In this document: positions 6,137 to 58,554 of the stretch, piece after piece
Layout of the letters: every line of letters begins with the position of its first letter
Position numbering within the stretch: the first letter of the stretch is position 1
Virus record (IMG/VR): IMGVR_UViG_3300009104_001827
Coordinates: 147,118-211,117 of that record
Strand: one strand, 5' to 3'
DNA length: 64,000 bases
The notes under the pieces: generated by a model
What the model was told of the DNA's origin: nothing
The model's input: only the letters and a program-made list of their open reading frames with translations
The model's database searches: none
Program-made: the position numbers and the translations under genes

Positions 6137-6142
6137 ATAACG

Positions 6143-16456: not shown

Positions 16457-16475
16457 ATATACAATTCCGATTAAG

Positions 16476-37544: not shown

Positions 37545-38259
37545 GCATTAGTTCCTTAGGCCAATATTCGCTCAGATCTAGAGCGGATTTGAAGCCTGTG
37601 GGCGAATGAAGAGGAGCCTTCCTGATTCTGGCAATTATGCCCGGCTTCTGGGCGAATGGTATATTTTCATCTTTCCTAATTTCTGAAATAGATAGCTCCG
37701 CATATAAATCTATTAGACGGTCCCATTGCTTGTGCATGGATTCAGCCTTGCTTAAAAATTTTTCAATTAATAATTCCTTGGGAACATTTATAAAAATTTC
37801 ACTACAAATCAAATCGTCTATTAGATGATTTAGCGGCACCCCCTCAGGAATAGAGCTTTCACCGGAGAAAAATTCTATTGCGGTAACCTTATGCTTGTCA
37901 TCGAGATCTTTAATTATGCCCCTGCCAAATGGGTTGGCTTCAAGAATAAACCGATCGACCTGCCCCCGCACCCACTCCTTAGACGGTTGACATTCGCCGT
38001 ATATGAGCTGCCCAGGTCGAACGCCGTCGGGGTTCTCAAAGAGCACCCCCGTGATTTCCGCTTCGTTCTCTATTTTGACAACCCTTTTTCTGAAAAATTC
38101 ATAGCAGGCAAAAAAGCTAAATTCTTTATGTCTGGCCTGCCCCTGAGGAATTAATCTCGTGCAGTTTGAAAACAGTCCCCGGGTAATGAAGCCTGCTTTT
38201 GATAGAAAATGCACCTCTACTACGGTGTTGCTCAGAGCTCCATATAATATGTTATCCAT
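37519..38259 (-). CDS. Hypothetical protein, possible fibre assembly chaperone
   Basis: Directly downstream of the giant fibre gene; C-terminal IRKAP...L..YWPKELMPKP resembles tail-fibre-assembly tails. Confidence 0.5.
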   Translation of the reverse strand: MDNILYGALSNTVVEVHFLSKAGFITRGLFSNCTRLIPQGQARHKEFSFFACYEFFRKRVVKIENEAEITGVLFENPDGVRPGQLIYGECQPSKEWVRGQVDRFILEANPFGRGIIKDLDDKHKVTAIEFFSGESSIPEGVPLNHLIDDLICSEIFINVPKELLIEKFLSKAESMHKQWDRLIDLYAELSISEIRKDENIPFAQKPGIIARIRKAPLHSPTGFKSALDLSEYWPKELMPKPSSVFS

Positions 38260-38269: not shown

Positions 38270-41200
38270 TTAGTCAGTATCTACTTTATTACCAGTATCT
38301 TCCCAGGAATCTTTCCATTTTGCAGACCCCAGTATCGACAGGAAAAGTTCCCCGTTGGGAATTATGGTTCCACCAGGAAGGGCATTCCCTATCTTCTCTT
38401 CCCATGAATCACATATTCCGCGCATTCTAGCCAGGCATTGCGAGTGCGCAGCCCCACCGATGTAAATCACTTCGCAATCACCATCTACGCCTGCGGCCCC
38501 ATATTTATCGCAGTATTCAGTTGTGATTTCAATTAGGTCTGCGTCCGTAAATCCCGGATGGCCTTTATATGGGCCGCCGGGTTGAAAAGTGTTGCTATCA
38601 CTATAATTCGATGCGACCTGCGGATTTCTAGCGAAAGCTTCAGCCTCCTCTTGGGTGTCAAAATAATCGTTGGGAAATATTGACATTGTTCCCGCTAAAT
38701 TACTGCCCTCCCGGACGCCAGCGGCGCCTTGGTGTTTAGAATTATCATGTGATCCGTCGTAATCATCAAAACCAACAACAGGTAATTTAAAAGTTCCACC
38801 CCCACTCTTTACCCACCAAGGGGGGATATGCTCACCGTCCACGTGGGGAAGAGAGTGGTTAGTATACGGAAATACCGAGTCACCCACTGGCGTACCCCCC
38901 CAACGGCCGTCAGGATTATAAGCATTCCACGGGTTCGAGGCGCCGACAACATACGAAGTTCCGGCACCAAGATGGGTAGTGAATTCATCGGACGAATTTA
39001 ACCTAAGAAACGCCTGACATTCGTAAAGCTCCCCCTTCCACCAAGCCCGGTCCCCCGGGTAATATTGCGTTCGCGGAGTCATCGTGACGTATATGTCAGC
39101 ATTATCTCCCGCGCCCTCAGGTTTCCCTCCTTCACTTAGTTCCCAGCCTCCATAATCCCAAATTCTCTCGAGATTTATATTCTCCCATAGCCAATTTCTT
39201 CCAGCAACCCATTTTCTCGTCTTATGATCGTACCAGGAAAACCCTAGTTTCTCCCTTTCTTTTGCCCTGCGTATCACCCAGTTTATCGCCGCATCGCGCG
39301 AAGCAAACATTTTAGACCCCCTACAGGTTATTGATACATCCTCAGAGTCATAAATATCCGTAGAGCCTTTCAGTATGTTGTCGCTTCCTGCTTCTGCGTT
39401 TATGTACCATTTAGTAAGCTCCTGCTTGTTTCCGGAATCTAGGTAGCTCTCTGAATAAAACGCGCCCTTCGCTCCAGTCAATAGCCAGCCCAGGGAATCC
39501 CCATTTTCACCAATGTATTCCCACTTGTTATTTGCTCCGCCAGGAGCATCATCTCCTGTTCCGTAGCCAGATGCACTTCCCCCTTCCTCATTAAATCTCC
39601 ACACCTTCCAAACGCCGCCGTCTTGGGTTTTTACTAAATCCCCCCTATAGTAGCCGGGCGGGGAATATGGACGCACCTGACAGCCGCCCCATGCCCCCGG
39701 TTCTAAGTTGTTGCCGAAACCCCAACCCGACATTTGAAGGGAGGGGTGGAGCTTTCTAAGTAATCGTTCCCATGACTTTTTTCTTAAAAGGGGCTGGTCA
39801 TAAGCCTCACCCAACCACATCGGGCCATTCGAGGAATCCGGAAGGAACTGGTTGGTGACTTTCTTCGCTCCGGACCAGTCCACCTTACCAAAAGCGTCCC
39901 CCACCTCAGTTGGGGGTGTGTTTATCGACGAATTTGCGCCCGCATCCACGTCCGCTTGCGTGGCAATACGATAGTCTCCCCACATCATCGGATGGTCCTC
40001 AGCACCCCCCATCGTTGACTCCCCGGGTACGTTGCGATATATGGGGTCCAACACGGTAGGAGATAATCCATCACTGATCTTGTCGTCATATTCCTCCTGC
40101 CACCTAGATTTACTTTCGCTAGGCGGGGGAAAGGGCTCGTAGGAGCCCAAATGCCAAAAGGCATAAATTGCGCAGGTATCCCACGCAGCTCCCACACCAT
40201 GACTGCCGCAATTTTTAGCCAAGAACAGATCTCCATCAGACAATATTACGTCTCCCGCGCAGTGAGGAAGGCTGGCGTTAGTATAAGCGCTTCTATATAA
40301 GCTTTCTCCTAGTGGTCCAGATCCAGCAGGTTGGGCGGCAGTTCCAGGCTCGCTCGCGTAATACGGCCGATACATCGCAGGCAAACCATTAGTCATAGTT
40401 TCCCAGTCGGCTGCAGACACTCTTCCATATTCCCCCCACGTCGGCCTCCAGTCGAACATTCTCCAGGGATGAAAGAACATTATGGAATTGTAAACATTAA
40501 AAAGACCCCAATCGTGGCCAACTTGACCACCGTACCAAAGGGCATCTGCACTAAGAACATTCCATCCGCTTTTCTTGGCGATAAAAGAGGAATCTCCGCG
40601 ATGCTCCAATTCGCCAATACCCAAACCTAGTTCGCTGGTCCCCGATGCGAAGTTCAGCATGTATTGCCTAATCGAGTCACCGGCACCCGTGGGCCAATAC
40701 CCATTGGGCAAGTCAAAAGTCCACTCCTCCCACTCCTCCCCAAACTCATCGACCCAATCGTCAATAGTCTCGTGAAGCTCGCCATTGACCCACTCCCGAT
40801 CCCACCCAGGGAAAACCACGGTATATCTCTTGCCCAGTTCAATATCTTTCGCCCATATTATTTCCGGGGCATAAATCGTCGATGCCAGCGGATTATATTC
40901 GTCAATTTCCTCCGCATTTATAAACCTTTCGGCAAGTTCAAACCTCAATTCTCGATTATGTCTAGCCGTATATGGCCTATCCTTCCAATTCTCAATCATA
41001 TCTTTGGCGGAATAAAGCGCGAATTTCTCAGGATTCTGGTCAGCGCCTTGATTATGAGAAGTGCAACCTCCGTCGCCGGGAGTGCCGCCGTCGGAAACCT
41101 GATTGTCGGGCCCTCCGTGATGATTGCCGATGACCCAATGCGGCTTAGTCCCTGCCCCGTCCTCAATACTGCTCTTCCAAACCCCGGTGGTCCCAGGCAT

Positions 41201-44200
41201 TGTGTCGTCCCCCCTTATACCAAGGCCTCGATTGTAGTTGTCTGTCGCAGGATCACCCCAATCACCCCAATCTTTAGCCCAGTCGTGAGGCATCAGCCAT
41301 AGGTTTCCTTTATATATAACCCTATCACCATGACGATACCACGTAGAACTGTCCCAATCAAGTATTTCCTGAAATAAATCCGTCCACCATGATTGAATAA
41401 ACTTGGTCCCGGCTTTCGGAAAATCTCCATATTTTATTGTGCCGCTCGGAATGTCGTTGTATGCCCTCCATAAGCGACGGTTACGTTTGGGGCTACGATG
41501 ATCCTGAATGGATATTATATCTCCGGCGGATATATCATTTTCCCACAACCAGTTCATACATTCCCCTACGGGGATATTAGTTAAATCCGTGACCGCCAAT
41601 TCATTGTATTGAGAACTTCGTTTCGATTGAGAGCAGTAGGAGTCCATTTGATTTTCTCGCCCACGCCAGGAATGGGCCTCATCGGGCCCAATCGTAAAAT
41701 TATTCATTCCGTGCCTTTTGAGTTGGCCGTAAGCTTCCATGACATCTGTCATCGGGCCAAACCCAAAGTCTACCGCTCGCTGAGGGAATTTATAAAAACC
41801 AGCATATCGATTGAGCGAGCCCGCTCCCTGTTGAGCAAGGAAGGCTAACCAATGCTCGTAATTAGAGATTCCGGGGGCGGTATGTGGAGCCCCCTGCGAC
41901 TGGCGTCTGTGCGGTAGTTGATTACCGGAAGAAAAGACTTGTCCCGCAAGCGTAAAGGTAGGATATGAACCAAAATTGACGCCAATCCATACCTCTAATC
42001 TCTGTGTCCAATCCCACCCTTGGCGAAGCTGATTAAGAGCAAAAACCCAATCCCAAACGCTATAACCGTTGCCCGCATCCAAGCCTTCCAATTGTTCTGC
42101 CCCAGCGGGAAGATACCTCTGCCAGTAAGTTGGAGAGGGAACCTCACGGTTAATAAAAGTATAGCCTTGAGTATCAGTCAATTCTATAGTTTCTTTATTA
42201 TCTGAGGTTCGTTGATTCCATCCTGGAACATCGAATACGTCAAATTCCCCCAATCCGGAAAAGTTGTCGGGTTGTCGTTGATCAAGGCCCGCTGAATAAT
42301 TTCGATAATCCACCGCAAGGGACACCTTGCCAGCCTTGTCGCCCCTGTCTGCCCATGCCAGCGCGCAATGGCCGCCTATTTTTTCGGCGAAACCCGTGTA
42401 AATTTGGCTATGACCAATGGAGGTGGCGTAACCTCGCAGGAACCTTTTATACGGATCGCCGCCCCACTTTTGGCCCAGCTCCATTGTTTGGTGCATTATG
42501 CCTATCTGAGTTCGCCACCTGTGCTCCTTTTCGAGGCGGTCCACAGACCACATACTACTGTAACCAGTTTTCCCAGCCCCGGCCCCGTCTTTATCGGGAG
42601 CTATGTATGTGCCGTTAGGAATGGGCGCACCACCCTCAATACCTCCTTGACCCTCTTCCACCCTCCAATGCATTCTATATACTGTTCCACCAAAGTTGAA
42701 CCTATCGCCGGGCTTCAAAAATGTATAATTATCGTGAGAAATTGCATCGCCGACCAAACCGTGATTGTGATACTTGCCCAATTTGGTCATGGTGTTGGAG
42801 TTCGGATCCAACCAACCCCAAGACACATTCTCGCCGACGCCTTGGTTTTCTTGCCCGACAAGCAAACTGAATTGCGACTTCCAACTTTGATGAGCCTTAT
42901 CCCCGAAGGGCAAAGACCACGGGTCGCACATCCAGGCCCCAAACATGGCGGTTGAGGGGAAATTTATCCTTCTATACTCCAAATGACCCTGCAAGAGCAA
43001 AGAAAATACAGAGTCAGGTATTACCTCCGGACAACCTTGAGTAAGCGCTCCGGTCTGCAGTCCCAATATTTTTGTCAGACTCCCGCGTCCTGACGCCGCA
43101 GTAAGCCTTGGGTTCTTTGGTTCGTCCTTCACTCCAAACTGAGAGCTCTCAGCTTTAGTGGTATCAAAATCGCCAACAATCCAAGCATCATCATTAAATC
43201 TGTCATTGAAATTTCCGCCGAAAATAGAGTAGCCGAAAGTGTACGCCAAAGAATCTCCAAACGAGCTATGCAAGCCCCAAGTATCGGTCGCAGCCTCTGA
43301 GTATCTCTCAATTTTGGAGTATATTGGCCATTTTATGTCAGGATGATACTCTCCTTCATTCCCTGCGGTTGCCATATCGGGCACCTCGGAAATGCTACCC
43401 GCCGGCTTCCAGCTGTAAGTTTCGTCGCCAGTAAACCGGTTCATAAATTTAAACGCATCAAGCGCGCCTCGGGGGTGGTGAGTAGGGAGTGCTGGGGCCC
43501 ATTGGGAAACGCTCATCTCCCCCATCACTTGCCACCAATTATACATGCCATCAGGAGGATTTTGTGAATTATTCGCATGATTCACTACGCCGGGAAAGTA
43601 ATAATTGTTCCATCCGTGCTCAGAAGCATTAGAGAATAAATCGATCAAGTCCAGTTGACCTGCTGTGGGCCATGATTTAAAATTGAAGTCCCGTATAAAG
43701 CTCGGCGCGAACGGATCTAGTGAACCCCACCCGCAGCTCGCGTCTCCCCACGCTAAGCTCACTACATGGGAAAGCATGTTCGTCCAGGTGACAGTTATAC
43801 CGGTCGGCGCATTGGAGCCAGACACAAAACTGCCCAATAGATTATGGGTAAAATCTATATATTCGGTGTCGAGCAAATTCTTCTCATTCACTATATTGGT
43901 ATTACTGTCGCCATAGAATGGGTTGACAGATTCTCCGAAAATCGAACCTGCCGTCCCGAGATATTCGTTGTCTTGCCCTCCATAATATAAATACATAGTC
44001 CCTGACCCCCCATAATCGACTTGACTGGTGACGCCGACGCCCGCATGGTCAAGGTCTAGGTGCCACCCTGAAATTCTTTCGTCGGCCCAGGTTGACGCAT
44101 TAGTTCGAAGGGAGGTATAGCTCTTTCCTCCAATAATATCCCCGGAGGAATCCGGGGCATACATGACCTGGAAGCCCTTGGAAAATAACTCCCCGCTCTC

Positions 44201-50200: not shown

Positions 50201-53200
50201 ATATTTTACGGCTTCCCCACCCGCAAATGGGTCGGGATCGCGGTCCGTCATATGATGAATCAGGCCCCAGTTGTCATTTTGCCAAAGTTCATTTACCGTT
50301 AAATCTCCGAACGAATCAAAGGTATCGCTCCCACCATGGAACATAACATTATCCGCTCGCCTGACCTCGCCATGGGTTGCTTCGCTGTGGAAATCCAAGC
50401 CTTGCACCGGGATGTCCTTGCACCCTATAATTGACCCTAGGATTTTTACATCGCCGTCTTCTGTGACGTAGATCGTAGAATGCTCATTTGTTGACGCCCA
50501 AACAACATTATCATCTGTTAATTTTACCGGAAACGGGACCGCCGGAGCATTGCGGTTTGCAGCCAATTTAAGGCAGTTCGCCCTAAGATTATTGTCATCG
50601 TTATTATTGAGAGAGTGCTGACTCGGGCGATCCATGTATGAATAATTTGCTCGATCCTTAAGCCTATACATCGCAAGGGCGAGGCATTCAGTGCCAGATA
50701 CCGTCATGGTCTTGCTATCGTGGAAGTAATCTATAACGCAATGATTTTTGTGCGATCCCCCGTAAGGCAGGTCTAGATCTGGCCAGCCTATGTACTCCCA
50801 TTTGGGACTAATCCCCGGCTCGTCTTCCGGAAGGGCGTTTTCGATGGAGACCCATCGTTCGCCCAAATGCTCCCTTTCCTTAAACCAACTAATGGACTCA
50901 TTATCGGTCCACGGAGCTGCTTCGCGGGCTCCATTGTATTTCTTGTCGTGCCCCCACCAGCTCCGCTCATTCCAATCCGGGGTGCCCCATTCGCGCGTAG
51001 TGTTAAAGCGGTCCCCATCGTCCCATTGAGACGTTGGGTACAAATTCTGAAATTTACCATGTGGCCACGAGATGCCGTTCCAGGAAGTGAGCTTGTTGGA
51101 AATTTCCGCATTATCCCGATACGGAAAAAGCCAAGCTGGAACCATCCACCCTCTGTCATTTTGTACGGCCGCCCCCGCCATATGTCGCTCTTTGCTCCCC
51201 TCAAACCCTGCGACAACAAAATGTTCCCTCTTCTTCGTCGCAGAATTATCGGTATCTGTGCCGCCATAAAATTCCCAAGCGGGCTTTATCATCATGGTAG
51301 AAAGACTCTTAGCGTACTCCGATGTACCATCGAGAGAGAACGAGACATCATAAGCACCCTCCGCTCCGGATCGAGCCTGTCTTGCGAATGGAATATAGTC
51401 CTCAGAGTTGAGAATAAAATGAGTATTTACGACCTTGGGAACGCCCCGGTTGTCAGGCTTATCAAACCCGACGCATTCAATCCCCCCTTCTTTCCAGAAG
51501 TTTATATTGTCGTACCACGGAAGAATTCTTCCTGCGATTTTTAATTGCTCCTGAGAGGCCCACCAAGGTGTCACGCCAGCAGGATATAACTCTTCCTCCG
51601 GAATCCATGTTACATTATTATGCAAATAGGAATCTTGCTCGGCGCTAGTCTTATCGAACCAGTCTAACGGAAATGTGGCCCATGCCATCCTCTCCCATTG
51701 CGGGGCAGGGTTAGCCCGGTTATGATCTTTTGTTAGGTACGTCGCCCACCCCGCAAGGTGGGGGTCGTTTTTATTGCTTGCAATTGGGTCGCCTGCGGCG
51801 TGGTTAAAGTTGGCATATGATAAAAGGTCGAATCTGTCTTCGGCATCAATCAAATCATGAGACCAATCTCCCCAGTCTTCGGGATCGTCGCTAGAGCTAT
51901 TGAAGCTTTTATCTGTGATGCCTAGGGAGTTGTTTTCGTTCTTCCCGAATCCATATAGCTTCTTGTCTGTAGTAATAAATACGGTATTACCTCCCCCAGA
52001 CCTAACGAAATCTATGTCGGGTTCTGGGTCTAATAAGGTATCAGTCGTGCCGTTCGCGTATATTTTTACCCTTTGCAGCTCGTCGTCTTGTGCGTCCTTC
52101 AATGGGGCACACATATTATGCTTTCCAAACGTATCTAAGTTCCATTCTAAATTTGAACCGTAATATGTTTCAGGTTTGCCGTCAATTTTCTTATAATTAC
52201 TAATTCCGAGGTACCCCAACTCGGAGCTGTCCATTCCAGAGGCATACAGCTTATTATTTGAGATCATGAATCTATTTTGCCAGCCCAAACCAGCAGAAAC
52301 GGCATAGGTTTTGCTAACGGCATTATTTACGTCAAGATACGTATCTGCGTCCACATCCGGAGCCGCGCCACTTACGTTTGTAATCTTAACTGACATTGGG
52401 AGGATCGCCGTGTTCTGTAGTCCCGCAAATGAATTGCCCAATTTAAATTCTGAAACGAACCCTAAATTCCCCCTCAAGACCGTGGGCGAATTAAAGGCAT
52501 AATTAAATAAATCAACATCTTTCCTTTGTGTGCCCCCAGGGTTCTCATTAGAGAAAAGGGATAACGTCAATTCTTTTGTTGAACTCATATAGCTCTGGCC
52601 ATCAACGGCTTGCATCTCGAATGAGATATTAATATTCAAGCCGGAATTGGTAAATATATTTGACATGTTATCAAATGGCCTCAAAAGATATTCGCTTTCG
52701 CCATGAGTGGAGTCGAGTATATTTTCTGCGCTGGGACTAACTCCTCCCGCTGGTTCGCCTGAAGCATTATGAGCGTCTAAGCATGAATAAAATACCATTA
52801 CGTCATTTGATTGGCTCAGCTCGTTTTGCGTCGGCAAACTTCCGGAATCCTCATTGGAGTTCCACACCACACCTCTTTCCTTCGCGTAGACTATATCTCC
52901 CAATTCATAGGGTAAGTTATTTTTCCATTCATCCACTCGCTGCCACATGGATTCAAACAAAGACGGCTGAACGCCAGAAGACGCGCGCCGAGCGTAATAT
53001 AATATATTTAGTTCCTTTGTGAAATCTCCGGTGTCGAATGATTGATCGTGGGTCCAGGGAGCAATCTCTCCCTCTGGTCCGCTGATGTTTTTCCATTTTG
53101 GCATTACCTGCAATTTATCTCCAAGCTGCTCAAGCAGTCCTATATTAGATCCGTTGTTTTCTATTTTGAGTATTGAAGAATTTTTATGGGACACTTCATC

Positions 53201-56200
53201 GTATTGGTATTCAATTTTACTATTCATGCCGCCCAACAAAGAATCTGAATCGAGGAGCGACTCACTAATAATCCTTGATGCATACTCCACAGGTCGAACA
53301 AATACCCAAGATTCACTCACGCCAGGTACTTGGCCTGCGGGGATATCAGTATCGGCTTGCCACACATAGGTGCCATCGTGCACTGCCTCGTCAGCGGAGT
53401 AGGCCTGGTTGGAAAGCCACTGAGATGGTTCGCCGATCCTTATGTAGGGACTTTCCATAATCCCTGCGTATGTCAGTCCAAAATCAGAATAAGAATCGCC
53501 GGTGTTTATCGGCAACCTTAGGTATCTTCCTAAAACATTAGCATTGGACATAGAGGAAATAAACCCAGAGTAGGTCGTAAAGTTATTCCCGTCCGCCCCC
53601 TTTAGCTGGGGGATTAGTTTAATTGTTTGATTGGAATTGATGCTGATTTCCCCACCATCATATATTGCGCCATGATTTGGATGGCCAGTATCGGCGTTTC
53701 CTCCAGTATATATTTCAGTTGTTAACTCTATTGTTGGAGGGTATGACTCATCCTCTTTAACGAACTTAATTGGATTTACATCGCCCACTCCTCGACTATC
53801 GAGATTAAATCCTGCGTCGAGATTGAAGTCGATATCACTATCAATCGAGTCCACCCAACCCCTGAAGGCCCGTATGGCAGGATGCCTATCTTCATCTTGA
53901 TTATTCTCGTTAAGTGGGTGTGGAAGGTCTCCCGAAGAAAGGGTGTCGCCTTCTGCCCTCAGATCAACGTTCCAGTCCTCATAGTTAACACTTACATAGT
54001 CAAGCGATGCCAAAAACAAAGGGCTATCTGCATCCGGAACGCCGCCGACCCAAGTATCTATCATATGTGTTGTGGGATATTTTATTCTTGGAGTCCAGAA
54101 CTTCGCATTGTTGCCGGAGGCATCATAGGTTTTTAATCTTGGCCCAAAAATATCCAGCCTAGAGTTGAAGGCTTCAGACACGGCGTATTCGCTTGAACCT
54201 TCGGCCTTATGTATAAAATCAAAATCTCCTTCAGTTAAAAAGTATTGTGGCTCCACGCCAGCAGCGATCTCCTCTGAAGATGGATAGGTGCGATCAAGGT
54301 CAAATTCCCTACGCGCCACCGGCTGCCAATATTCACTAGGACGAATAACCAATGTATAGTTGCTCGTAAATCCACTCATAGTCCCGGAATTTATCGACAC
54401 GGGGAATTCGTAGATTTTTTTACCGACATACCCGGAAATGTCAGCCTTATATTGAAGGCCCTCTATAACGGTTGAGTTTTGCAAGTTCCCTTCCAAAACA
54501 AAATTATCATCCAATAGGGGAGTTGCATCCGAGACATAACAGAACTGTTTAATTTTAACCCGCCATTCATTGTCGTCCATTTTTACGGCGTCACCAATTC
54601 GATAGTAATTTTCATAGGTAAGATCATATGAATAATTATCCGAACCAAAGAGGTCCCTCTGTCGAATTTTGAATTTTCCATCCAATTCCTCCAACCCGTA
54701 ATATTGAGCGTAAGCCCTTCCTCGATTGTCATTATTTGCGGGATCGACATTAGGGTCAATGCGCTCTGCGGTAAATTCGTTCTCGGTAATTTCGAGCCAA
54801 GTCGTTTCGGCATATAAGTTCTTTCCTCTAAATCTGGAATATTGTAGATCTTCTACTAGGTTCGATAAAAAATACGCCGTCTCACTTGCGGACTCTTTTG
54901 GAAATATCCCAGGAACAATCCCCACACCGGCCGGATCTGCAGGAGAATCTGTATCCTTTATGCACTGAAAGCAATATGAGGCGACCGCTGCGTCTGCCTT
55001 AAGAAATAAAAACTCAGCACTATCCAAAAGGTTCGTATTCTCATCTGTGGGATAGCGCCCGGCCCACTCCTGGTAGGTCAGGCTTTCCCCCGAATTCGGG
55101 TCGACCATAGTAGGGGTTTTCTCCTTAAGTGTGACAAGATCTCCGACCTTGTAATTTTCGGCCTGCTCCATATCCCACGGAGCTATATCATACAATCTTT
55201 CAGACATTAATCCAAGTCCGCTTGCTCCATCAAGAGAATTAAACCACTGAAGTCCTAGCGTAATCCCCGATTTGTTATTCGGGGGAGAAGTAGATAGGCC
55301 CGTCTGTGACGACTTAAAGATTTTAACCCAACCATCGTAGAGGGTAATCTGAGTAACCATGGATAATGGTGAAATCGCGGTATTGCTGAGAATACTTAGC
55401 CTGGTCCACTTCTCTTTGTTTAAAATTGGATCGTTATCTGCCGATGCCCCCATCGAGACATTAGCCTTAAAGAATAAATTTAAATGTAATGGAAAAAAGT
55501 TTTCATTATCATTCTTTAGGGATTTGTAATATATTTTTGCTCCGTCGTCTTGATATACGTATACTGTGTTATGCTCGTTTCCCGGAGAAACCCATTCAGA
55601 ATATACTTTCTCTTGTCTCCAGGCATCACACGCGATTGCTGTGGTCACCTCCCACCAATCTTCCCGTGGGACCCTAGTCATATTGCCTCCGGAATATTCC
55701 TTGGTATCATTCCATTCAGGTATATTTGCCAAGGTCTGAACGTTGCCCTGGGGATTTCCCGTACGATCAACAGTTAAACTGAAAATAGATTCCTGCTGGA
55801 GGTCCGATCGCCCCAAATCTATAAAGTGTTTTGCCTCAAATAAATTTTGCGATGTATCCGCATCAATCGTAGTCGACAAAACCTGATTGCCATCGGCAGT
55901 AAGATCTTTAAACTTACTACCGTCAAAACCCTTAAAGCCAGTCTGAAGCAACCCTAATGCTGCACTAAACTCTGAATCCGACATCTCGTCAGTTCTTTTT
56001 AGAATAGGCAGAAAAGCGGCGTCAACGTGAGAATTGATAAATTTCTTGCCTTCATTCTCGATCTGATCTGCCCTGCCGAGCTTGTTGCCTAATATTAAAT
56101 AGTGACAGGGGTTGTCTCCACTAACCGAGGCGCTACCGGTTATAGTCTTAATTGAGAGCAATTTGGTCAAAGCCTGATCCTGGGTGCTGGACTCAAGTTC

Positions 56201-58039
56201 GTAGTCATAATCTACATTCGTTTTTGGTTGTCCATGATCTAAGCTCATCGAGCCCAGCGCCCCATGCCCGCCGACATACATATTGCCATTACTGAAAATT
56301 TGGGGCGTTACGAATTCGATTCTCTGCCGAGAAAGCACATCCTCGACCATCATGATATACTTGCCTAACTGTGTACTGCCCTTATTGGAGCCGGGGTGAA
56401 CACCCCCTCTTCTCCTCGCGTGAACATAGCCCCTCCTCATATAAAAAAATGGCGTAAGATCTCGATATTGAAAATGTAGAAGATCTCCCTCGGAGGCCAG
56501 GTCAGTATTAATATTGTTGGGGTTCAATATTCCCTGAAGATAACGATTTATGTCGGATCTGGATATTTGGGATGTAGAATATGTGCTAATCCCTGACGTG
56601 GAGCTGTAGGAGCTTAACTTTGTGGTCCTTCCAAAGGTGACCGCCAATCTAGGCTGCCCCCCATGATCCTTTCGGAGGGTTTTTGTATAAATAAATATAT
56701 CATATCCGCCATCTTGGTACGGGCCGCTTTCACTGCTGGCGCCAGAATACCATGACCGGCACTTATCCCTGCTATATCTTTTTAAGGGTTTTGCGAATTT
56801 CACCAATAAGTGACCGAAGATATTGGAAGACCCAGTAAAGTCTGCCATTCTTATGCGGCCCGCTTCTCGCTGTACGGGTTGGCCTGCTAGGTTTGTTTGG
56901 CCTTGGTACGAGCTATTATGGGCAAACTTTTTGATTTCAAATTTTTTCTCAGAGAAATATTTGTATATTGATGCAAGCGATGAATTTGGGCGATTAATTT
57001 GAGAGTCATACTTAACCCAATACTCATTAATCTCACCGCTTTCCGAACCGTACCATGGGGTTCTTTCGGAATTCCATGATCCGTTCGCATTAGAAGCGCT
57101 CGAGGGGTAAGTTTTAGCGGCCCCAACCTCTTTTTTGCACATGGCTAAGGAGGGAAATCCAATTAAATTAAACGTTTCCGTCCAGTTGGTTAAATCATCG
57201 ATGTTTGCCAGTCCAGATGGGGGATTATAGCTAACTATATCGCCAGGAAAATAAGTTAGGCCGGAATTCCACTGGCTAGACCCAGATATGTTGTCCTCGG
57301 CACTCATTTTTGCATCTAAAAAATCGAAGGAAGCCCCCATAACAGCATTAAGCGAAGTTGACGAAAATCCAAACCTCCTGTCGGGGAGCGCACTTATATC
57401 ATTGTCCCCAAACCCGTATTCAGGATAATCCACAATATATCTATCTATTATCTGCCCATCTTGCCCAGTTGCCGGTGAGGCCGTTCTTGCGGATCCGCCC
57501 CCAAAAGAAATTTCCGAAACGGGCCTTAATTGAATCGGGTTCTTAGATGAACCAGATTTGGGAATTAGACAAGAATAACACACTAGATATTTCATGTCAA
57601 TAAACTCTGATAAATTTAAACAAATTTCATTGTCGTGCATTATTCCTCCCGTCGCCCATTCACTCTTGGCATCAACCTCCCTCAAGCTCCCGGCCTCGCT
57701 AATTGAGTAGTCTTGTGCGAGTTCAGCGAAACTCTTAAAATAGGTATTAAAGTTTGCGTCAGATACTCCTGCTCCGGCACTCTTCAGGACGCAGACATAT
57801 AAATTAAATTGACTTGGTTTTGATCTAGATTTTCTATCCAAGAAATCGTCTGCGCCAGAGACCTTGTGAACAACCTGCCCCAAATCATAGTTTTTGTACG
57901 GCCTGAACCTTGCGTACCACACGGGGAGCGCCCCAGGAAGCCCAACCCTTGAAGCGCCGAAAAGTGTTCTTGTTGTCGATATGGTCGTGGGATCGGCAGA
58001 AAGAAAGTTTAAATTAAAATCTATGTTTACGCCACCCAT
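38270..58039 (-). CDS. Giant (6589 aa) fibre/adhesin with many CBM5/12-like modules, RCC1-like blades and galactose-binding-like domains
   Basis: Uninterrupted 19.8-kb ORF; about 15 W-x4/5-Y-x2-GD-x-V modules; RCC1-like repeats such as VEAGSDHILIRTASGKVFGVGDNS; Trp-rich. Confidence 0.85.
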   Translation of the reverse strand: MGGVNIDFNLNFLSADPTTISTTRTLFGASRVGLPGALPVWYARFRPYKNYDLGQVVHKVSGADDFLDRKSRSKPSQFNLYVCVLKSAGAGVSDANFNTYFKSFAELAQDYSISEAGSLREVDAKSEWATGGIMHDNEICLNLSEFIDMKYLVCYSCLIPKSGSSKNPIQLRPVSEISFGGGSARTASPATGQDGQIIDRYIVDYPEYGFGDNDISALPDRRFGFSSTSLNAVMGASFDFLDAKMSAEDNISGSSQWNSGLTYFPGDIVSYNPPSGLANIDDLTNWTETFNLIGFPSLAMCKKEVGAAKTYPSSASNANGSWNSERTPWYGSESGEINEYWVKYDSQINRPNSSLASIYKYFSEKKFEIKKFAHNSSYQGQTNLAGQPVQREAGRIRMADFTGSSNIFGHLLVKFAKPLKRYSRDKCRSWYSGASSESGPYQDGGYDIFIYTKTLRKDHGGQPRLAVTFGRTTKLSSYSSTSGISTYSTSQISRSDINRYLQGILNPNNINTDLASEGDLLHFQYRDLTPFFYMRRGYVHARRRGGVHPGSNKGSTQLGKYIMMVEDVLSRQRIEFVTPQIFSNGNMYVGGHGALGSMSLDHGQPKTNVDYDYELESSTQDQALTKLLSIKTITGSASVSGDNPCHYLILGNKLGRADQIENEGKKFINSHVDAAFLPILKRTDEMSDSEFSAALGLLQTGFKGFDGSKFKDLTADGNQVLSTTIDADTSQNLFEAKHFIDLGRSDLQQESIFSLTVDRTGNPQGNVQTLANIPEWNDTKEYSGGNMTRVPREDWWEVTTAIACDAWRQEKVYSEWVSPGNEHNTVYVYQDDGAKIYYKSLKNDNENFFPLHLNLFFKANVSMGASADNDPILNKEKWTRLSILSNTAISPLSMVTQITLYDGWVKIFKSSQTGLSTSPPNNKSGITLGLQWFNSLDGASGLGLMSERLYDIAPWDMEQAENYKVGDLVTLKEKTPTMVDPNSGESLTYQEWAGRYPTDENTNLLDSAEFLFLKADAAVASYCFQCIKDTDSPADPAGVGIVPGIFPKESASETAYFLSNLVEDLQYSRFRGKNLYAETTWLEITENEFTAERIDPNVDPANNDNRGRAYAQYYGLEELDGKFKIRQRDLFGSDNYSYDLTYENYYRIGDAVKMDDNEWRVKIKQFCYVSDATPLLDDNFVLEGNLQNSTVIEGLQYKADISGYVGKKIYEFPVSINSGTMSGFTSNYTLVIRPSEYWQPVARREFDLDRTYPSSEEIAAGVEPQYFLTEGDFDFIHKAEGSSEYAVSEAFNSRLDIFGPRLKTYDASGNNAKFWTPRIKYPTTHMIDTWVGGVPDADSPLFLASLDYVSVNYEDWNVDLRAEGDTLSSGDLPHPLNENNQDEDRHPAIRAFRGWVDSIDSDIDFNLDAGFNLDSRGVGDVNPIKFVKEDESYPPTIELTTEIYTGGNADTGHPNHGAIYDGGEISINSNQTIKLIPQLKGADGNNFTTYSGFISSMSNANVLGRYLRLPINTGDSYSDFGLTYAGIMESPYIRIGEPSQWLSNQAYSADEAVHDGTYVWQADTDIPAGQVPGVSESWVFVRPVEYASRIISESLLDSDSLLGGMNSKIEYQYDEVSHKNSSILKIENNGSNIGLLEQLGDKLQVMPKWKNISGPEGEIAPWTHDQSFDTGDFTKELNILYYARRASSGVQPSLFESMWQRVDEWKNNLPYELGDIVYAKERGVVWNSNEDSGSLPTQNELSQSNDVMVFYSCLDAHNASGEPAGGVSPSAENILDSTHGESEYLLRPFDNMSNIFTNSGLNINISFEMQAVDGQSYMSSTKELTLSLFSNENPGGTQRKDVDLFNYAFNSPTVLRGNLGFVSEFKLGNSFAGLQNTAILPMSVKITNVSGAAPDVDADTYLDVNNAVSKTYAVSAGLGWQNRFMISNNKLYASGMDSSELGYLGISNYKKIDGKPETYYGSNLEWNLDTFGKHNMCAPLKDAQDDELQRVKIYANGTTDTLLDPEPDIDFVRSGGGNTVFITTDKKLYGFGKNENNSLGITDKSFNSSSDDPEDWGDWSHDLIDAEDRFDLLSYANFNHAAGDPIASNKNDPHLAGWATYLTKDHNRANPAPQWERMAWATFPLDWFDKTSAEQDSYLHNNVTWIPEEELYPAGVTPWWASQEQLKIAGRILPWYDNINFWKEGGIECVGFDKPDNRGVPKVVNTHFILNSEDYIPFARQARSGAEGAYDVSFSLDGTSEYAKSLSTMMIKPAWEFYGGTDTDNSATKKREHFVVAGFEGSKERHMAGAAVQNDRGWMVPAWLFPYRDNAEISNKLTSWNGISWPHGKFQNLYPTSQWDDGDRFNTTREWGTPDWNERSWWGHDKKYNGAREAAPWTDNESISWFKEREHLGERWVSIENALPEDEPGISPKWEYIGWPDLDLPYGGSHKNHCVIDYFHDSKTMTVSGTECLALAMYRLKDRANYSYMDRPSQHSLNNNDDNNLRANCLKLAANRNAPAVPFPVKLTDDNVVWASTNEHSTIYVTEDGDVKILGSIIGCKDIPVQGLDFHSEATHGEVRRADNVMFHGGSDTFDSFGDLTVNELWQNDNWGLIHHMTDRDPDPFAGGEAVKYGSLIQGNIAYGETWEPYIEHIDYVNGQYVSYSGSLWSKIGDQGAGAHTFPGVIPGEWNSVSESITPLVTQDAASTNFDNLNNNYLHKYWPNTGPAYVATDSNGLNPDVKRIAEEDWGSIEFFGGNVIRQDGTTISDPSVGIAGSYRKVDLPSPTGGYPVYRHVANVDNLIWFYNGYWRASTATYYNSNEFDKQYAKGAVTTTVDKTPADVAVWSVLTQRESHKEINIYNTGVQFGGQYSSDSKKDTAWSVQPNGVLPATANDPLYPAAWIPNNLIPGNWLDAPEGSSWVGVWWSEQGGVPTLWPQATPVFYQAFHLDEGIDVSQVTVSFDFAVDNTMLDIQIHSEAGWHSINPDLVTGEEWETTSYLTNWDFNKSMLGYAGGNGHQYLFGWRPLFPDNWTANVWLWLEDHPDFVDNNGNPKYTTYWHDHARKSGEQQILPGVTKWGTFWGENNDRDGFGNTATSWFGASGSNLDEELRDHGMHYPAYEQLNQTTHYVAQTLELHLDNHGNRFEYLSNLLDKSYDYSRPNHPTTWDNSNKPSLSDLACMGVYNFAKVVIIQDNCSAWGSRQLGYDTEPGVMRSKYGGANYYWGLQSHVETGGLSGAARLHLVPWGYDYTPNTYGFGGHKDSGSLNPSVNEYVQLGTWNPDKLGGAGFTQWHQGSELSAERYGPNYPKPLTVGQKYEVRFFVSYRTAYSEPDVGAIIWAWEGGVPTATVDNLEAVQGGNLVNDYAGSGHQAIDVGDLGSGWTETKFTFVATHTSHSVEFICHTTSSDSTAFIYSVSCKPVTAAWYGGWFGELNSIDIGPQGIGASNIFRAGAGAAGNNALVMYVKNAGNVNNPAGLLVTNLTINAPLLLGYGAEIWTEDAEVKTEYRIQHRAGNGIGGAAGKLSTDMVTGILPYPLEDYEQKEDYAGYTWYGDQTDWDYYMNVWTDVADAREELYPWMTGEEYAKLHWAGPLTEADRATRYGAIRHKSTLERRTLAKSEWFRNKYVSQTYMRDWVEDPILGHTFLARASQAANNKLTSLGKTGGNWYYTAKYGQWIYITDAEKTKKEDGERFECFMSGIDIDFTEISSNAENYGVGNALFPVIDGEIVGKLAFTGTGTGWRKDSGIFFHIYVRPSSGIVLRTIKPEILTQGRWGVMYSPGKTTDARTAGDWSTIVQTRYGMISYNDHRVVWSILDDGPPDVRAYADGVAGETGTGYDQDKVMAASAWTWPENNGGGHHEDLDPPLVLAQGYHTFYMWEYDWGQPTGWGLLGDEGKFRYLLSAEIGGAAVNEEFHDSGDIVFHAGWILDNDAIYGSNLPGIGSWENHIKYSPRGFSGFFDYTAAAGMGEDPEYQGSTISKSSYNEGDIVTAQVADGDDLFGTLVFVSMKDDNTSDIGFSESLERVDGKKWSMPAPKAITKTYDLSTNSLADIEDEISSTTLTPEPHTLYDHEDYGSDKALQVEAGSDHILIRTASGKVFGVGDNSLQQIDWRNKTGGIESDFDLGDRLGRESGKGFYKLEGTAPSSLNPIYDPSWSAIEQPALPPEKWAYGKTYQPGSRVWIDHVSHVVYVGPGEGVEGTLLQEHLQISIPSITENGGLETLPPETLKSDWADTNKLGKWQKPDVEVLTFGSIGEAMHALVNQENGAGGTLGSTGLSGWFPLGKLGMMPNDGATHTFPSSEIKMPRTANFKLYKKAFGDTHFCTREIFIKPHLISHGNNNNQAVELDEIIAVAASGNNSLILSQSGNLFGTGENKISGSDRDEYEGRSLGNALGLESEFLDGPEFIFPNVEFISLQGDCATFISEGRSYKCGGVGLRPYLENYSFKGAPAVILDDASGREGEPIIAKQVFMDSFGFWSKPKRRIRKWPQFIDGKLCRKGSKDIRDKVLPEINRLADAWVSNKSYRTSLPSGHSQLLNGQPNTLFHHGYGSDMVAGSNADQAGSAFIGREPDFVTHKGTIYQCIKDHFFSFEPGSSLGELYWRESSASMINVNPIQYFYREWQLDRWATISYVNESGELFSKGFQVMYAPDSSGDIIGGKSYTSLRTNASTWADERISGWHLDLDHAGVGVTSQVDYGGSGTMYLYYGGQDNEYLGTAGSIFGESVNPFYGDSNTNIVNEKNLLDTEYIDFTHNLLGSFVSGSNAPTGITVTWTNMLSHVVSLAWGDASCGWGSLDPFAPSFIRDFNFKSWPTAGQLDLIDLFSNASEHGWNNYYFPGVVNHANNSQNPPDGMYNWWQVMGEMSVSQWAPALPTHHPRGALDAFKFMNRFTGDETYSWKPAGSISEVPDMATAGNEGEYHPDIKWPIYSKIERYSEAATDTWGLHSSFGDSLAYTFGYSIFGGNFNDRFNDDAWIVGDFDTTKAESSQFGVKDEPKNPRLTAASGRGSLTKILGLQTGALTQGCPEVIPDSVFSLLLQGHLEYRRINFPSTAMFGAWMCDPWSLPFGDKAHQSWKSQFSLLVGQENQGVGENVSWGWLDPNSNTMTKLGKYHNHGLVGDAISHDNYTFLKPGDRFNFGGTVYRMHWRVEEGQGGIEGGAPIPNGTYIAPDKDGAGAGKTGYSSMWSVDRLEKEHRWRTQIGIMHQTMELGQKWGGDPYKRFLRGYATSIGHSQIYTGFAEKIGGHCALAWADRGDKAGKVSLAVDYRNYSAGLDQRQPDNFSGLGEFDVFDVPGWNQRTSDNKETIELTDTQGYTFINREVPSPTYWQRYLPAGAEQLEGLDAGNGYSVWDWVFALNQLRQGWDWTQRLEVWIGVNFGSYPTFTLAGQVFSSGNQLPHRRQSQGAPHTAPGISNYEHWLAFLAQQGAGSLNRYAGFYKFPQRAVDFGFGPMTDVMEAYGQLKRHGMNNFTIGPDEAHSWRGRENQMDSYCSQSKRSSQYNELAVTDLTNIPVGECMNWLWENDISAGDIISIQDHRSPKRNRRLWRAYNDIPSGTIKYGDFPKAGTKFIQSWWTDLFQEILDWDSSTWYRHGDRVIYKGNLWLMPHDWAKDWGDWGDPATDNYNRGLGIRGDDTMPGTTGVWKSSIEDGAGTKPHWVIGNHHGGPDNQVSDGGTPGDGGCTSHNQGADQNPEKFALYSAKDMIENWKDRPYTARHNRELRFELAERFINAEEIDEYNPLASTIYAPEIIWAKDIELGKRYTVVFPGWDREWVNGELHETIDDWVDEFGEEWEEWTFDLPNGYWPTGAGDSIRQYMLNFASGTSELGLGIGELEHRGDSSFIAKKSGWNVLSADALWYGGQVGHDWGLFNVYNSIMFFHPWRMFDWRPTWGEYGRVSAADWETMTNGLPAMYRPYYASEPGTAAQPAGSGPLGESLYRSAYTNASLPHCAGDVILSDGDLFLAKNCGSHGVGAAWDTCAIYAFWHLGSYEPFPPPSESKSRWQEEYDDKISDGLSPTVLDPIYRNVPGESTMGGAEDHPMMWGDYRIATQADVDAGANSSINTPPTEVGDAFGKVDWSGAKKVTNQFLPDSSNGPMWLGEAYDQPLLRKKSWERLLRKLHPSLQMSGWGFGNNLEPGAWGGCQVRPYSPPGYYRGDLVKTQDGGVWKVWRFNEEGGSASGYGTGDDAPGGANNKWEYIGENGDSLGWLLTGAKGAFYSESYLDSGNKQELTKWYINAEAGSDNILKGSTDIYDSEDVSITCRGSKMFASRDAAINWVIRRAKEREKLGFSWYDHKTRKWVAGRNWLWENINLERIWDYGGWELSEGGKPEGAGDNADIYVTMTPRTQYYPGDRAWWKGELYECQAFLRLNSSDEFTTHLGAGTSYVVGASNPWNAYNPDGRWGGTPVGDSVFPYTNHSLPHVDGEHIPPWWVKSGGGTFKLPVVGFDDYDGSHDNSKHQGAAGVREGSNLAGTMSIFPNDYFDTQEEAEAFARNPQVASNYSDSNTFQPGGPYKGHPGFTDADLIEITTEYCDKYGAAGVDGDCEVIYIGGAAHSQCLARMRGICDSWEEKIGNALPGGTIIPNGELFLSILGSAKWKDSWEDTGNKVDTD

Positions 58040-58554
58040 TACTTGCTAAAAATTACCTTTGAATATTTATCGTCTATGGGTTCTATTTTTCCACCCATAA
58101 ACTTTAGCCATCTAATACCGAGGCTATTATCCGCCTCAACAATATTAACCAAATGATCAAATTCTTCCCCAAACAGCCAATCAAAATGCTCTCTGGATAT
58201 TCTCATAAATTCATATACTGCAAACATAGCTTTAAGGTTGCCAAATGACTTAAAAAAGTCGCTCTTAGATTTAATCATGTCCAGAGAATTCCTAGAGCCG
58301 AGCACCCAGACCTGACCTATGCGTTCTTGAGGGGAATGGGCGACCCCGGTGGAGCCGATATATGTTTCGTCTTTTAAGCAAAAGCTAATTGTTCGAATTG
58401 ATCTGTTGAAGGTTTCATAAACATGCTTTTCGTGGTTTGGCCACCCGAGATAATCCGAATGTCGCGAGTCCACGTTCCTTGGATTCAATGATAGCTCGAT
58501 AATATCTGAGTCGATGACATCCCTGACATAACCGTGTTTTCCTAATATTTTCAT
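58039..58554 (-). CDS. GNAT-fold acetyltransferase, DUF2833/T7 gp13-like
   Basis: GQVWVLGS, LVNIVEADNSLGIRWLKFMG; TAATG-coupled to the giant gene. Confidence 0.7.
   Translation of the reverse strand: MKILGKHGYVRDVIDSDIIELSLNPRNVDSRHSDYLGWPNHEKHVYETFNRSIRTISFCLKDETYIGSTGVAHSPQERIGQVWVLGSRNSLDMIKSKSDFFKSFGNLKAMFAVYEFMRISREHFDWLFGEEFDHLVNIVEADNSLGIRWLKFMGGKIEPIDDKYSKVIFSK

What the first reader, a model, noticed from the sequence alone, without database searches (positions are those of the whole stretch)
38270..58039. 6589-aa single ORF with ~15 divergent CBM5/12-like modules
Seen: nearly a third of the window is one ORF with dispersed modules such as WNSGLTYFPGDIVSY, WLSNQAYSADEAVHDGTYVWQA, WKNNLPYELGDIVY, WAYGKTYQPGSRVW, WDSSTWYRHGDRVIYKGNLW and QYYPGDRAWWKGELYEC. 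It is Trp/Gly/Asp-rich, has no signal peptide, and shows no DNA-level repeats that I could find. The same module occurs in the 582-1859 fibre. Inference: a multivalent glycan-binding virion appendage, possibly for host capsule or for attachment to polysaccharide particles. It is very large for a phage protein.
Basis: partly seen in the sequence, partly recalled or inferred. Interest (0 to 1): 0.65.

Follow-up and report, generated by a model that had tools for sequence, protein, structure and literature searches.

The report
Giant 6589-aa marine phage protein
A real, conserved 733-kDa gene of an uncultured marine jumbo phage, paired with a small acetyltransferase-fold gene, is most likely a fast-evolving sugar-binding virion appendage, but this is unproven and there are far fewer recognisable sugar-binding modules than first thought.

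Summary
The ORF is real: window 38270-58039 (-), 6589 aa, 733 kDa. It is not an assembly artefact. Two other IMG/VR contigs and an independent 148.5-kb contig carry it, and four lineages of ~200-kb marine siphovirus-like phages have collinear 5.9-6.05-kaa orthologues.

All six quoted motifs are present. "~15 CBM5/12 modules" is too many:
- Every Pfam CBM_5_12 hit is below the cut-off (7 of 87 tiles).
- A profile comparison with the phage's own true CBM5/12 domains supports two modules clearly, one marginally and about five weakly.
- RCC1 repeats are the only Pfam family above its cut-off.

The rest has no detectable relatives. Residues 1-1200 find only 7 proteins among 1.84 billion.

New findings:
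- The gene lies 65 kb from the tail-fibre module, at the head of the operon that holds terminase, putative portal and putative capsid genes.
- It is always preceded by an overlapping T7-Gp13-family gene, which I show has a GNAT acetyltransferase fold.
- A conserved ~730-aa N-terminal module with an invariant Met-Gly-Gly start also occurs as stand-alone ~1-kaa proteins.
- The Trp-rich distal part evolves at least as fast as the bona fide tail fibre.

Best reading: a virion adhesin anchored by its N-terminal module (confidence 0.45). Rivals: an internal or ejected protein, or a non-virion protein.

The parts
38270..58039 (-). Giant ORF, 6589 aa, 733 kDa, pI 4.83
   Evidence: Orthologues of 5875-6050 aa. 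In an independent strain 23 of 40 listed differences are synonymous.
58039..58554 (-). 171-aa T7-Gp13-family ('internal virion protein A') gene with a GNAT fold. Its stop overlaps the giant's ATG (TAATG).
   Evidence: phrog_308 E 2.4e-10. A profile search retrieves PF11090 members. AF2 pLDDT 86.7. Fold matches: GNAT Z 13.5, Foldseek 391 GNAT hits, TM 0.71-0.77 to phage 'Internal virion protein A'. The overlap is seen.
55850..58039 (-). N-terminal module (residues 1-~730). It is the most conserved part, has an invariant Met-Gly-Gly start and normal Trp content (1.1%).
   Evidence: Conservation profile. Alignment with the stand-alone proteins P0010 and P0011. Composition.
57140..57292 (-). CBM5/12-like module inside the N-module (residues ~250-300). 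Its position is conserved in the whole family, including P0010 and P0011.
   Evidence: hhalign probability 66% against the phage's own CBM5/12. Alignment.
51860..52297 (-). First group of RCC1-like blades (residues ~1915-2060)
   Evidence: RCC1_2 and WD40_RLD hits at residues 2009-2044. Blade motifs.
44780..45916 (-). Second group of RCC1-like blades (residues ~4042-4420), with a CBM-like motif at residue 4148
   Evidence: RCC1_2 41.5 bits (cut-off 22), two stretches. Five tiles hit. Blade motifs.
44270..44437 (-). Best-supported CBM5/12-like module (residues ~4535-4590)
   Evidence: hhalign probability 91-94% over 32 columns. Pfam sub-threshold hit at residues 4551-4566.
41225..41356 (-). CBM5/12-like motif at residues 5562-5605, inside a hypervariable region
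   Evidence: Pfam CBM_5_12 18.7 bits, below the cut-off. hhalign 5%.
38273..38554 (-). Conserved C-terminal ~90 residues (6496-6589), containing four Cys
   Evidence: BLASTP 36-39% identity to all lineages. Conservation profile. Cys positions.
37519..38259 (-). Conserved 246-aa ORF directly downstream. It is 246 aa in relative G001 too, at 42% identity. It is a candidate assembly factor.
   Evidence: No family hit.
582..1859 (+). 425-aa protein with a bona fide CBM_5_12 domain (residues 318-361)

Best explanation
The gene encodes a late-expressed, virion-associated adhesin, a very long appendage built as beads on a string.

Proposed steps (all inferred):
1. The conserved ~730-aa N-terminal module docks the protein to the particle.
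2. The co-translated Gp13-family GNAT-fold protein, and possibly the conserved 246-aa downstream protein, act as assembly or modification factors.
3. The long, acidic, Trp/Gly/Asp-rich and fast-evolving distal part exposes RCC1-like beta-propeller blades and several CBM5/12-like aromatic hairpins. These bind polysaccharide on the host envelope, or on particles where the host lives, and so raise the encounter and adsorption rate.
4. The host is probably a marine member of the Planctomycetota or Verrucomicrobiota.

Shown: the gene is real, under purifying selection and conserved as a cassette; which domain types it contains; and its pattern of evolution.
Inferred: its location in the virion, glycan binding and the role of the GNAT partner.
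For: - A real coding gene. Independent assemblies agree, and 23 of 40 listed strain differences are synonymous.
- Native composition. GC3 is 0.476 against 0.439 +/- 0.047 for the genome; GC2 resembles that of the tail fibres.
- The cassette of GNAT gene, giant gene and 246-aa ORF, followed by PhoH ... TerL, putative portal and putative MCP, is syntenic in relative G001. The GNAT-giant pair is also present in L017.
- Fibre-like conservation. The N-terminus is 45-66% identical between lineages. The distal part is full of indels and partly unalignable.
- Divergence from G001: giant 35% (N-terminus only), side fibre 31-47%, J-like protein 54%, TerL 76% and putative MCP 75%.
- The N-module exists as a separate ~1-kaa protein, followed in L004 by another large ORF. 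That resembles split proximal and distal fibre genes.
- CBM5/12-like motifs are enriched.
- The same domain occurs in this phage's proven fibre-class proteins.
- RCC1 repeats score above the Pfam cut-off.
- There is no TM segment, and the protein is acidic and Trp-rich like secreted carbohydrate binders.
- Language-model features of the last 400 aa point weakly to CBM_5_12 clusters.
- The DUF1501 gene points to a PVC host.
Against: - There is no direct evidence of virion location or of glycan binding.
- The gene is not in the tail or fibre module.
- It matches no tail-fibre PHROG and has no Peptidase_S74 domain.
- It has no trimer-type periodic repeats.
- All CBM_5_12 hits are below the Pfam cut-off.
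- Its constant partner belongs to a family annotated as an internal virion protein of T7-like phages.
- The structure of the N-module could not be predicted (pLDDT 36.5), so its docking role is a guess.
Confidence: 0.45

Rival explanations
1. It is an internal (capsid-packaged) protein that is ejected into the host, as T7 gp14-16 or the N4 virion RNA polymerase are. The Gp13-family protein would play the same, still undefined, role that it has for the T7 core proteins.
For: - The upstream gene belongs to the T7 Gp13 / 'internal virion protein A' family by profile and by fold.
- In Autographiviridae this gene directly precedes the internal core genes.
- The cassette sits with the head and packaging genes rather than the tail genes.
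- Internal proteins also evolve fast.
Against: - No similarity to any internal or ejection protein family.
- No TM or hydrophobic segments, which channel-forming ejection proteins usually have.
- The recognisable domains, RCC1 blades and CBM5/12-like hairpins, are of the extracellular-binding type.
- A 733-kDa chain of presumably beta-rich globular domains would have to unfold to pass a tail. From the 3032-aa tape measure, that tail is several hundred nm long (inference).
Confidence: 0.2
2. It is a non-virion protein made late in infection. It could be a cytoplasmic or lysis-released scaffold or binder, for example one that aggregates progeny or debris onto polysaccharide particles or remodels the host envelope from inside. 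The GNAT would be its modifying enzyme.
For: - No signal peptide.
- No structural-protein family match.
- Neighbours include non-structural genes: PhoH, a peptidase, a sigma-like factor and a nuclease.
- Short contigs of the gene occur in a metatranscriptome library, which is compatible with expression but no proof of it.
Against: - A fifth of a late operon and 9% of the genome is a high cost for an accessory function, yet the gene is kept in every known member of the clade.
- A conserved N-terminus with a variable distal part is typical of parts that plug into a larger assembly.
Confidence: 0.2
3. It is an artefact: an assembly chimera, a pseudogene or a chance open frame.
For: Only its unusual size.
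Against: - Three or more independent assemblies agree.
- The only indel in the strain variant is in frame, and synonymous changes are in excess.
- Full-length collinear orthologues at 35-46% identity have no stops.
Confidence: 0.01

Closest known systems
Long phage tail or side fibres carrying carbohydrate-binding modules (here the phage's own 3810-aa fibre with CBM_5_12 and a Peptidase_S74 chaperone)
   Same: - Very long and acidic.
- Conserved N-terminus with a variable distal part.
- CBM5/12-type aromatic hairpins.
- The fastest-evolving class of genes in the genome.
   Different: - Not in the tail module.
- No fibre PHROG match, no S74 chaperone and no periodic trimer repeats.
- Three times richer in Trp than the true fibres (3.45% against ~1.1%).
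- Preceded by a GNAT-fold gene.
T7-like gp13 - gp14/15/16 cassette (internal virion proteins)
   Same: A small Gp13-family GNAT-fold gene directly upstream of one or more large virion proteins. The next protein starts with Met plus a small residue (MC... in RHEph01 and HTVC309P, MGG... here).
   Different: - The downstream protein has no similarity to gp14-16 and no hydrophobic segments.
- It is 6589 aa long and carries binding-type domains.
- The phage is siphovirus-like (tape measure and lambda-like J), not a podovirus.
RCC1-like-domain and CBM5/12 (ChtBD3) proteins of bacteria
   Same: RCC1_2 repeats score above the cut-off. The W-x(3-5)-Y-x2-G-D-x-V core of CBM5/12 is present.
   Different: The blades are few and separated by long unrelated sequence, and no complete seven-blade propeller is detectable. 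The CBM matches are below the cut-off.
RTX/MARTX toxins with their small activating acyltransferase
   Same: A ~170-aa GNAT-superfamily gene lies directly upstream of a giant acidic protein. This resemblance is recalled from memory and is a lead only.
   Different: No GGxGxD repeats at all, no match to HlyC or RTX families, and the context is a phage late operon.

Membership tests
Pfam CBM_5_12 (PF02839) | Score at or above the gathering cut-off (26.2 bits) | tested here: not met
   Best scores are 18.7 and 18.0 bits. Seven of 87 tiles hit at E<=0.1, best E 0.0095.
Pfam CBM_5_12 (PF02839) | Profile similarity of single modules to bona fide CBM5/12 domains (this phage's own two) | tested here: inconclusive
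   hhalign gives 91% (residues 4535-4590), 66% (250-300) and 29% (4142). Other candidates score 0.4-10%; controls mostly 0.1-0.5%, with one at 4%.
Pfam CBM_5_12 (PF02839) | Binding of chitin, cellulose or another glycan | not testable with these tools
   This needs a binding assay.
RCC1 repeat (PF13540) / RCC1-like domain (PF25390) | Repeat score above the cut-off | tested here: met
   RCC1_2 scores 41.5 bits (cut-off 22) with two stretches at residues ~4042-4090. A second locus at 2009-2044 scores 19.8 bits.
RCC1 repeat (PF13540) / RCC1-like domain (PF25390) | Complete seven-bladed propeller | tested here: not met
   WD40_RLD scores 24-28 bits against a cut-off of 150. Only about 6 blade-like motifs were found, and they are scattered. 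No usable structure model exists.
Phage tail fibre / receptor-binding protein families | Match to a fibre family or a C-terminal chaperone, and location in the tail module | tested here: not met
   No PHROG match and no Peptidase_S74. The tail module lies at G000 62-120 kb and the giant gene at 185-205 kb.
T7 Gp13 family (PF11090, phrog_308), for the upstream 171-aa gene | Sequence-profile and fold membership | tested here: met
   phrog_308 E 2.4e-10. The profile search returns 138 proteins, many carrying PF11090 or named Gp13. TM 0.71-0.77 to 'Internal virion protein A' models. A direct Pfam scan at E<=0.01 gave no hit.
GNAT acetyltransferase superfamily, for the upstream gene | GNAT fold | tested here: met
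   VIA-align Z 13.5, 145 residues aligned, rmsd 3.1; 173 chains at Z>=8. Foldseek gives 391 hits at E<=1e-3.
GNAT acetyltransferase superfamily, for the upstream gene | Acyl-CoA binding loop (Q/R-x-x-G-x-G/A) and catalytic activity | tested here: inconclusive
   By eye no canonical loop follows strand 4. A motif-B-like N...G-F is conserved (N143 invariant). Activity cannot be tested here.
T7-like internal core / ejection proteins (gp14-16) | Sequence similarity, hydrophobic or helical channel-forming segments | tested here: not met
   No PHROG or phage tblastn match. The maximum hydropathy window is 1.36.

The most novel reading that the evidence does not exclude
The Gp13-family GNAT-fold protein would be an N-terminal acyl- or acetyl-transferase, and the protein encoded next to it would be its substrate. 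After removal of Met, the invariant N-terminal Gly of the giant protein would be modified, and this would be needed to mount the 733-kDa protein on or in the particle. The same logic could apply to the conserved N-terminal Cys of gp14-like proteins in T7-like phages. If so, the long-enigmatic T7 gp13 family would gain a biochemical function, and a conserved enzyme-substrate cassette would span podoviruses and jumbo siphoviruses.

What the evidence allows:
- Met-Gly-Gly is invariant even in relatives only 27-29% identical.
- MC... starts occur after the gp13-like genes of RHEph01 and HTVC309P.
- The top fold matches include protein N-terminal and lysine acetyltransferases.
- A complex prediction gave no verdict.
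Probability: 0.1. Interest if true: 0.8.

Novelty: new variant of a known kind. Interest (0 to 1): 0.55.

Why it matters
At 6589 aa this is, to my knowledge, among the largest phage proteins; I did not check that rank against the literature. It is the signature gene of an uncultured clade of ~200-kb marine phages with very long tails that probably infect Planctomycetota or Verrucomicrobiota, hosts for which few phages have been described.

If it is an adhesin, it would show how much coding capacity (9% of the genome) a phage invests in finding hosts, or polysaccharide particles, in dilute seawater.

About 90% of the protein has no detectable relative or predictable fold, so it is a large reservoir of unknown domains.

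The constant pairing with a GNAT-fold Gp13-family gene links it to an unexplained component of T7-like phages and makes the function of that family testable.

Tried and rejected
Searches and predictions that gave nothing:
- PHROGs on the whole giant: no family.
- NCBIfam: none.
- phmmer against PDB sequences: nothing at E<=1 apart from one chance-level hit at E 0.43 (aldo-keto reductase 3wcz).
- megablast and tblastn against 50,697 GenBank phages with the giant, P0010 and P0011: no match.
- AlphaFold2 of residues 1-760 with the 7-sequence family alignment: pLDDT 36.5, unusable, and not used for any fold claim.
- ESM-Atlas feature search: no usable hit for the N-module, and only a weak CBM_5_12 lead (0.81) for the last 400 aa.
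- Complex prediction of the GNAT protein with giant residues 1-110: no verdict (score 0.00). This counts neither for nor against binding.
- Promoter and terminator scans around the cassette were no better than shuffles.
- Pfam sheath family in the genome: none, consistent with a non-contractile tail.
- Literature searches found no description of this family or of a function for the gp13 GNAT fold.
- The look-up of encoding contigs refuses proteins over 5000 aa, so context for P0004 and P0005 was obtained through the search for related loci instead.

Ideas rejected:
- An RTX-like toxin with its acyltransferase: there are no GGxGxD repeats.
- Horizontal transfer as the cause of the higher GC: the excess lies in codon positions 1 and 2, as in the tail fibres, and GC3 is within 1 SD of the genome.

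Full report
**1. The observation**

The window is the last 64 kb of a 211,117-bp IMG/VR virus record. Another contig bridges the two ends of that record with ~694 extra bp, so the genome is essentially complete and circularly permuted.

An uninterrupted ORF runs on the minus strand from 58039 to 38270: 6589 aa, 733 kDa, pI 4.83.

Composition:
- Trp 3.45% against 1.28% in the rest of the genome and ~1.1% in the true tail fibres; Gly 10.2%; Asp 7.3%.
- No hydrophobic stretch of TM quality.
- No internal repeat by BLASTP, no RTX nonapeptides and a single short Gly-X-X run but no collagen-like domain.
- The higher GC of the gene lies in codon positions 1 and 2, as in the tail fibres. GC3 (0.476) is within one SD of the genome (0.439 +/- 0.047), so the gene is native.

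**2. It is not an artefact**

- Two other IMG/VR contigs from other samples carry the region at 100% and 99.95% identity. The only indel between them lies in a neighbouring peptidase gene.
- Runs from seven marine studies hold the N-terminal 6 kb.
- In an independent study a single 148.5-kb contig spans it at 98% identity, with 121 substitutions and one in-frame 3-nt deletion.
- Of the 40 substitutions listed, 23 are synonymous, which indicates purifying selection.
- A metatranscriptome library holds eight short matching contigs. That is compatible with expression but does not prove it.

**3. Relatives**

A word-indexed search found full-length relatives of 5875-6031 aa. An exhaustive HMMER search of 1.84 billion representatives with residues 1-1200 found only seven proteins:
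- three giants;
- two fragments;
- two stand-alone proteins of 1027 and 1075 aa (P0010, P0011).

There are four giant lineages:
- the window's own, which includes an NCBI MAG contig of 207,716 bp labelled Verrucomicrobiales;
- P0005/P0006/G001;
- P0004;
- P0007 = L017.

They are collinear. Identity to the window's protein is 45-66% over residues 1-100 and 400-700, and 25-40% over 1000-2100, 2400-2800, 3500-3600, 3950-4700, ~5400-5500, 6200-6300 and the last 90 residues. The regions 2200-2400, 2800-3500, 3700-3900, 4900-5400, 5500-6200 and 6300-6500 are indel-rich or unalignable. P0010 and P0011 align with residues 1-~720 only and share the invariant N-terminal Met-Gly-Gly.

**4. Domains**

- Pfam finds RCC1_2 above its cut-off (41.5 bits against 22) around residues 4042-4090, and a weaker locus at 2009-2044.
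- CBM_5_12 reaches only 18.0-18.7 bits against a cut-off of 26.2.
- Scanning 87 overlapping 150-aa tiles gave CBM_5_12 in 7 tiles and RCC1 in 5; nothing else recurred.
- A loose motif regex gives 13 hits against 4.4 +/- 2.1 in local shuffles.
- hhalign of family sub-alignments against the phage's own two true CBM5/12 domains gave 91-94% for residues ~4535-4590, 58-70% for ~250-300 and 29% for ~4142.

'~15 modules' is therefore too many: two or three are supportable and eight to ten are candidates.

PHROGs, NCBIfam, PDB sequences and GenBank phages gave nothing. AlphaFold2 on residues 1-760 failed (pLDDT 36.5). About 90% of the protein has no assignable fold.

The N-module has ordinary composition (Trp 1.1%). 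The distal part becomes steadily richer in Trp (2.6% rising to 4.4%) and is acidic.

**5. The phage and the gene's place in it**

The genome encodes:
- a 3032-aa tape measure, lambda-like minor tail proteins and a 1649-aa J-like central fibre;
- a 3810-aa side fibre with a Peptidase_S74 chaperone and a true CBM_5_12;
- further fibre genes at 62-120 kb of the record.

No sheath family was found. The phage is therefore siphovirus-like with a very long tail. Its terminase is only ~27% identical to any isolate.

The giant gene lies 65 kb from that module. It is the second gene of a minus-strand unit that starts after a ~100-bp divergent intergenic region. The order is:
1. a 171-aa gene;
2. the giant;
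3. a 246-aa ORF;
4. PhoH, a peptidase, a sigma-like factor and an ERCC4 nuclease;
5. the terminase, the putative portal and the putative capsid protein.

The same order is found in relative G001 (204,906 bp), and the small-gene/giant pair is also found in L017.

Identity between the two phages:

| Protein | Identity |
|---|---|
| PhoH | 81% |
| TerL | 76% |
| MCP (putative) | 75% |
| portal (putative) | 59% |
| small gene | 58% |
| J-like | 54% |
| 246-aa ORF | 42% |
| side fibre | 31-47% |
| giant | 35%, N-terminus only |

The giant belongs to the fastest-evolving class, together with the receptor-binding fibre.

**6. The partner gene**

The stop codon of the 171-aa gene overlaps the giant's ATG (TAATG). 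In the relatives the overlap is 23 nt.

- It matches phrog_308, 'internal virion protein'.
- By tblastn it matches the gene that follows tail tubular protein B in the Autographiviridae phages RHEph01 and HTVC309P, which is the position of T7 gp13.
- A profile search returned 138 proteins, many carrying PF11090 or named 'phage protein Gp13 family' or 'Internal virion protein A'.
- With a 120-sequence alignment AlphaFold2 gave pLDDT 86.7.
- The model is a GNAT fold: Foldseek finds 391 PDB hits at E<=1e-3, all acetyltransferases. VIA-align gives Z 13.5 to protein acetyltransferases such as PAT, PA4794 and Ard1/Nat.
- It superposes at TM 0.71-0.77 on predicted 'Internal virion protein A' structures.
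- By eye I see no canonical acyl-CoA loop, but a motif-B-like N...GF is conserved.
- Homologous small genes also precede P0010 and P0011.

A complex prediction of this protein with giant residues 1-110 gave no verdict.

**7. Interpretation**

The best-supported reading is a virion-associated adhesin (confidence 0.45). It would be anchored by the conserved N-module, with a long variable distal part carrying RCC1-like and CBM5/12-like binding modules. The arguments are:
- the fibre-like conservation pattern and rate of evolution;
- the recurrence of true CBM5/12 domains in this phage's proven fibre-class proteins;
- the existence of the N-module as a separate gene followed by another large ORF in other viruses;
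- the position at the head of the morphogenesis operon.

Virion location and glycan binding are inferred, not shown.

The main rival (0.2) is an internal, ejected protein. It rests on the Gp13 neighbour and on the head-gene context. Against it stand the binding-type domains, the absence of hydrophobic segments and the sheer size. A non-virion late protein (0.2) cannot be excluded. An artefact is excluded.

**8. Host hint**

The window also carries a DUF1501 gene (291 bits). Apart from a 79% match on a 23.7-kb contig binned as Halobacteriovorax, which is probably a fragment of a related phage, its closest cellular homologues are almost all from Planctomycetota and Verrucomicrobiota, at 31-43% identity. 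That fits the Verrucomicrobiales label of the MAG contig. It suggests a particle-associated, polysaccharide-degrading host and fits an adhesin reading, but the evidence is circumstantial.

**9. Novelty**

Phage fibres with carbohydrate-binding modules are a known kind. This one is a new variant in four respects:
- its size;
- its location outside the tail module;
- its near-complete lack of detectable homology;
- its fixed pairing with a GNAT-fold Gp13-family gene.

The most novel reading still allowed is that the GNAT modifies the invariant N-terminal glycine of the giant. By extension it might modify the conserved N-terminal Cys of gp14-like proteins, seen as MC... in two T7-like phages. I give this a probability of about 0.1. 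It would be testable by co-expression and N-terminal mass spectrometry.

Noticed in passing
window 12313-13587 (+): A phage-borne DUF1501 gene (PF07394, 291 bits). Its closest cellular homologues are almost all Planctomycetota or Verrucomicrobiota, at 31-43% identity, which hints at a PVC host. A 79% match on a 23.7-kb contig binned as Halobacteriovorax is probably a fragment of a related phage.
   Followed up: partly
window 13597-15561 (+): A 654-aa protein with bacterial thrombospondin type-3 (TSP3_bac) calcium-binding repeats, directly downstream of the DUF1501 gene and upstream of the head protease.
   Followed up: no
window 58656-59255 and 59258-59842 (+): Two adjacent ~195-aa genes are tandem paralogues (77% nucleotide identity over 178 nt). 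They are transcribed divergently from the GNAT-giant cassette.
   Followed up: no
G000 87476-96574 (L010:5476-14574): A tape measure protein of 3032 aa, which implies a non-contractile tail several hundred nm long. Next to it lie lambda-like L, K/I and J genes and a 3810-aa side fibre with Peptidase_S74 and a true CBM_5_12.
   Followed up: partly
G000 62436-65240 (L009:436-3240, -): A second Trp-rich ORF (934 aa, Trp 3.43%, Cys 1.9%) beside the fibre genes. It has no family match and no BLAST similarity to the giant.
   Followed up: partly
L003:1-4100 against G000 ends: Contig IMGVR_UViG_3300007515_000003 joins the last base of the record to its first base through ~694 bp that the record lacks. 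The genome is therefore closed or circularly permuted, at ~211.8 kb.
   Followed up: yes
L007:9446-9988 and L008:9347-9850: The gene after the gp13-like gene in Rhizobium phage RHEph01 and in Pelagibacter phage HTVC309P starts with Met-Cys. The giant family starts with an invariant Met-Gly-Gly. In both cases a small N-terminal residue follows a GNAT-fold gene.
   Followed up: partly
window 35767-35778: A 12-nt in-frame indel distinguishes contig IMGVR_UViG_3300013113_000869 from the window. It lies in the 314-aa peptidase-like gene. That gene is also the one member of the operon with no detectable counterpart at the same place in G001.
   Followed up: partly
L004:1-8914 and L005:1-12062: The stand-alone N-module genes (P0010, P0011) sit beside glycosyltransferase (GT2, GT25), sulfotransferase and HSP20 genes on short uncultured contigs. 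In L004 a further ORF of more than 971 aa follows directly.
   Followed up: partly
window 16428-20900 (+): The DNA polymerase appears to be split into separate ORFs: a 257-aa N-terminal piece, a 213-aa exonuclease subunit and an 856-aa polymerase. A 170-aa ORF lies in between.
   Followed up: no
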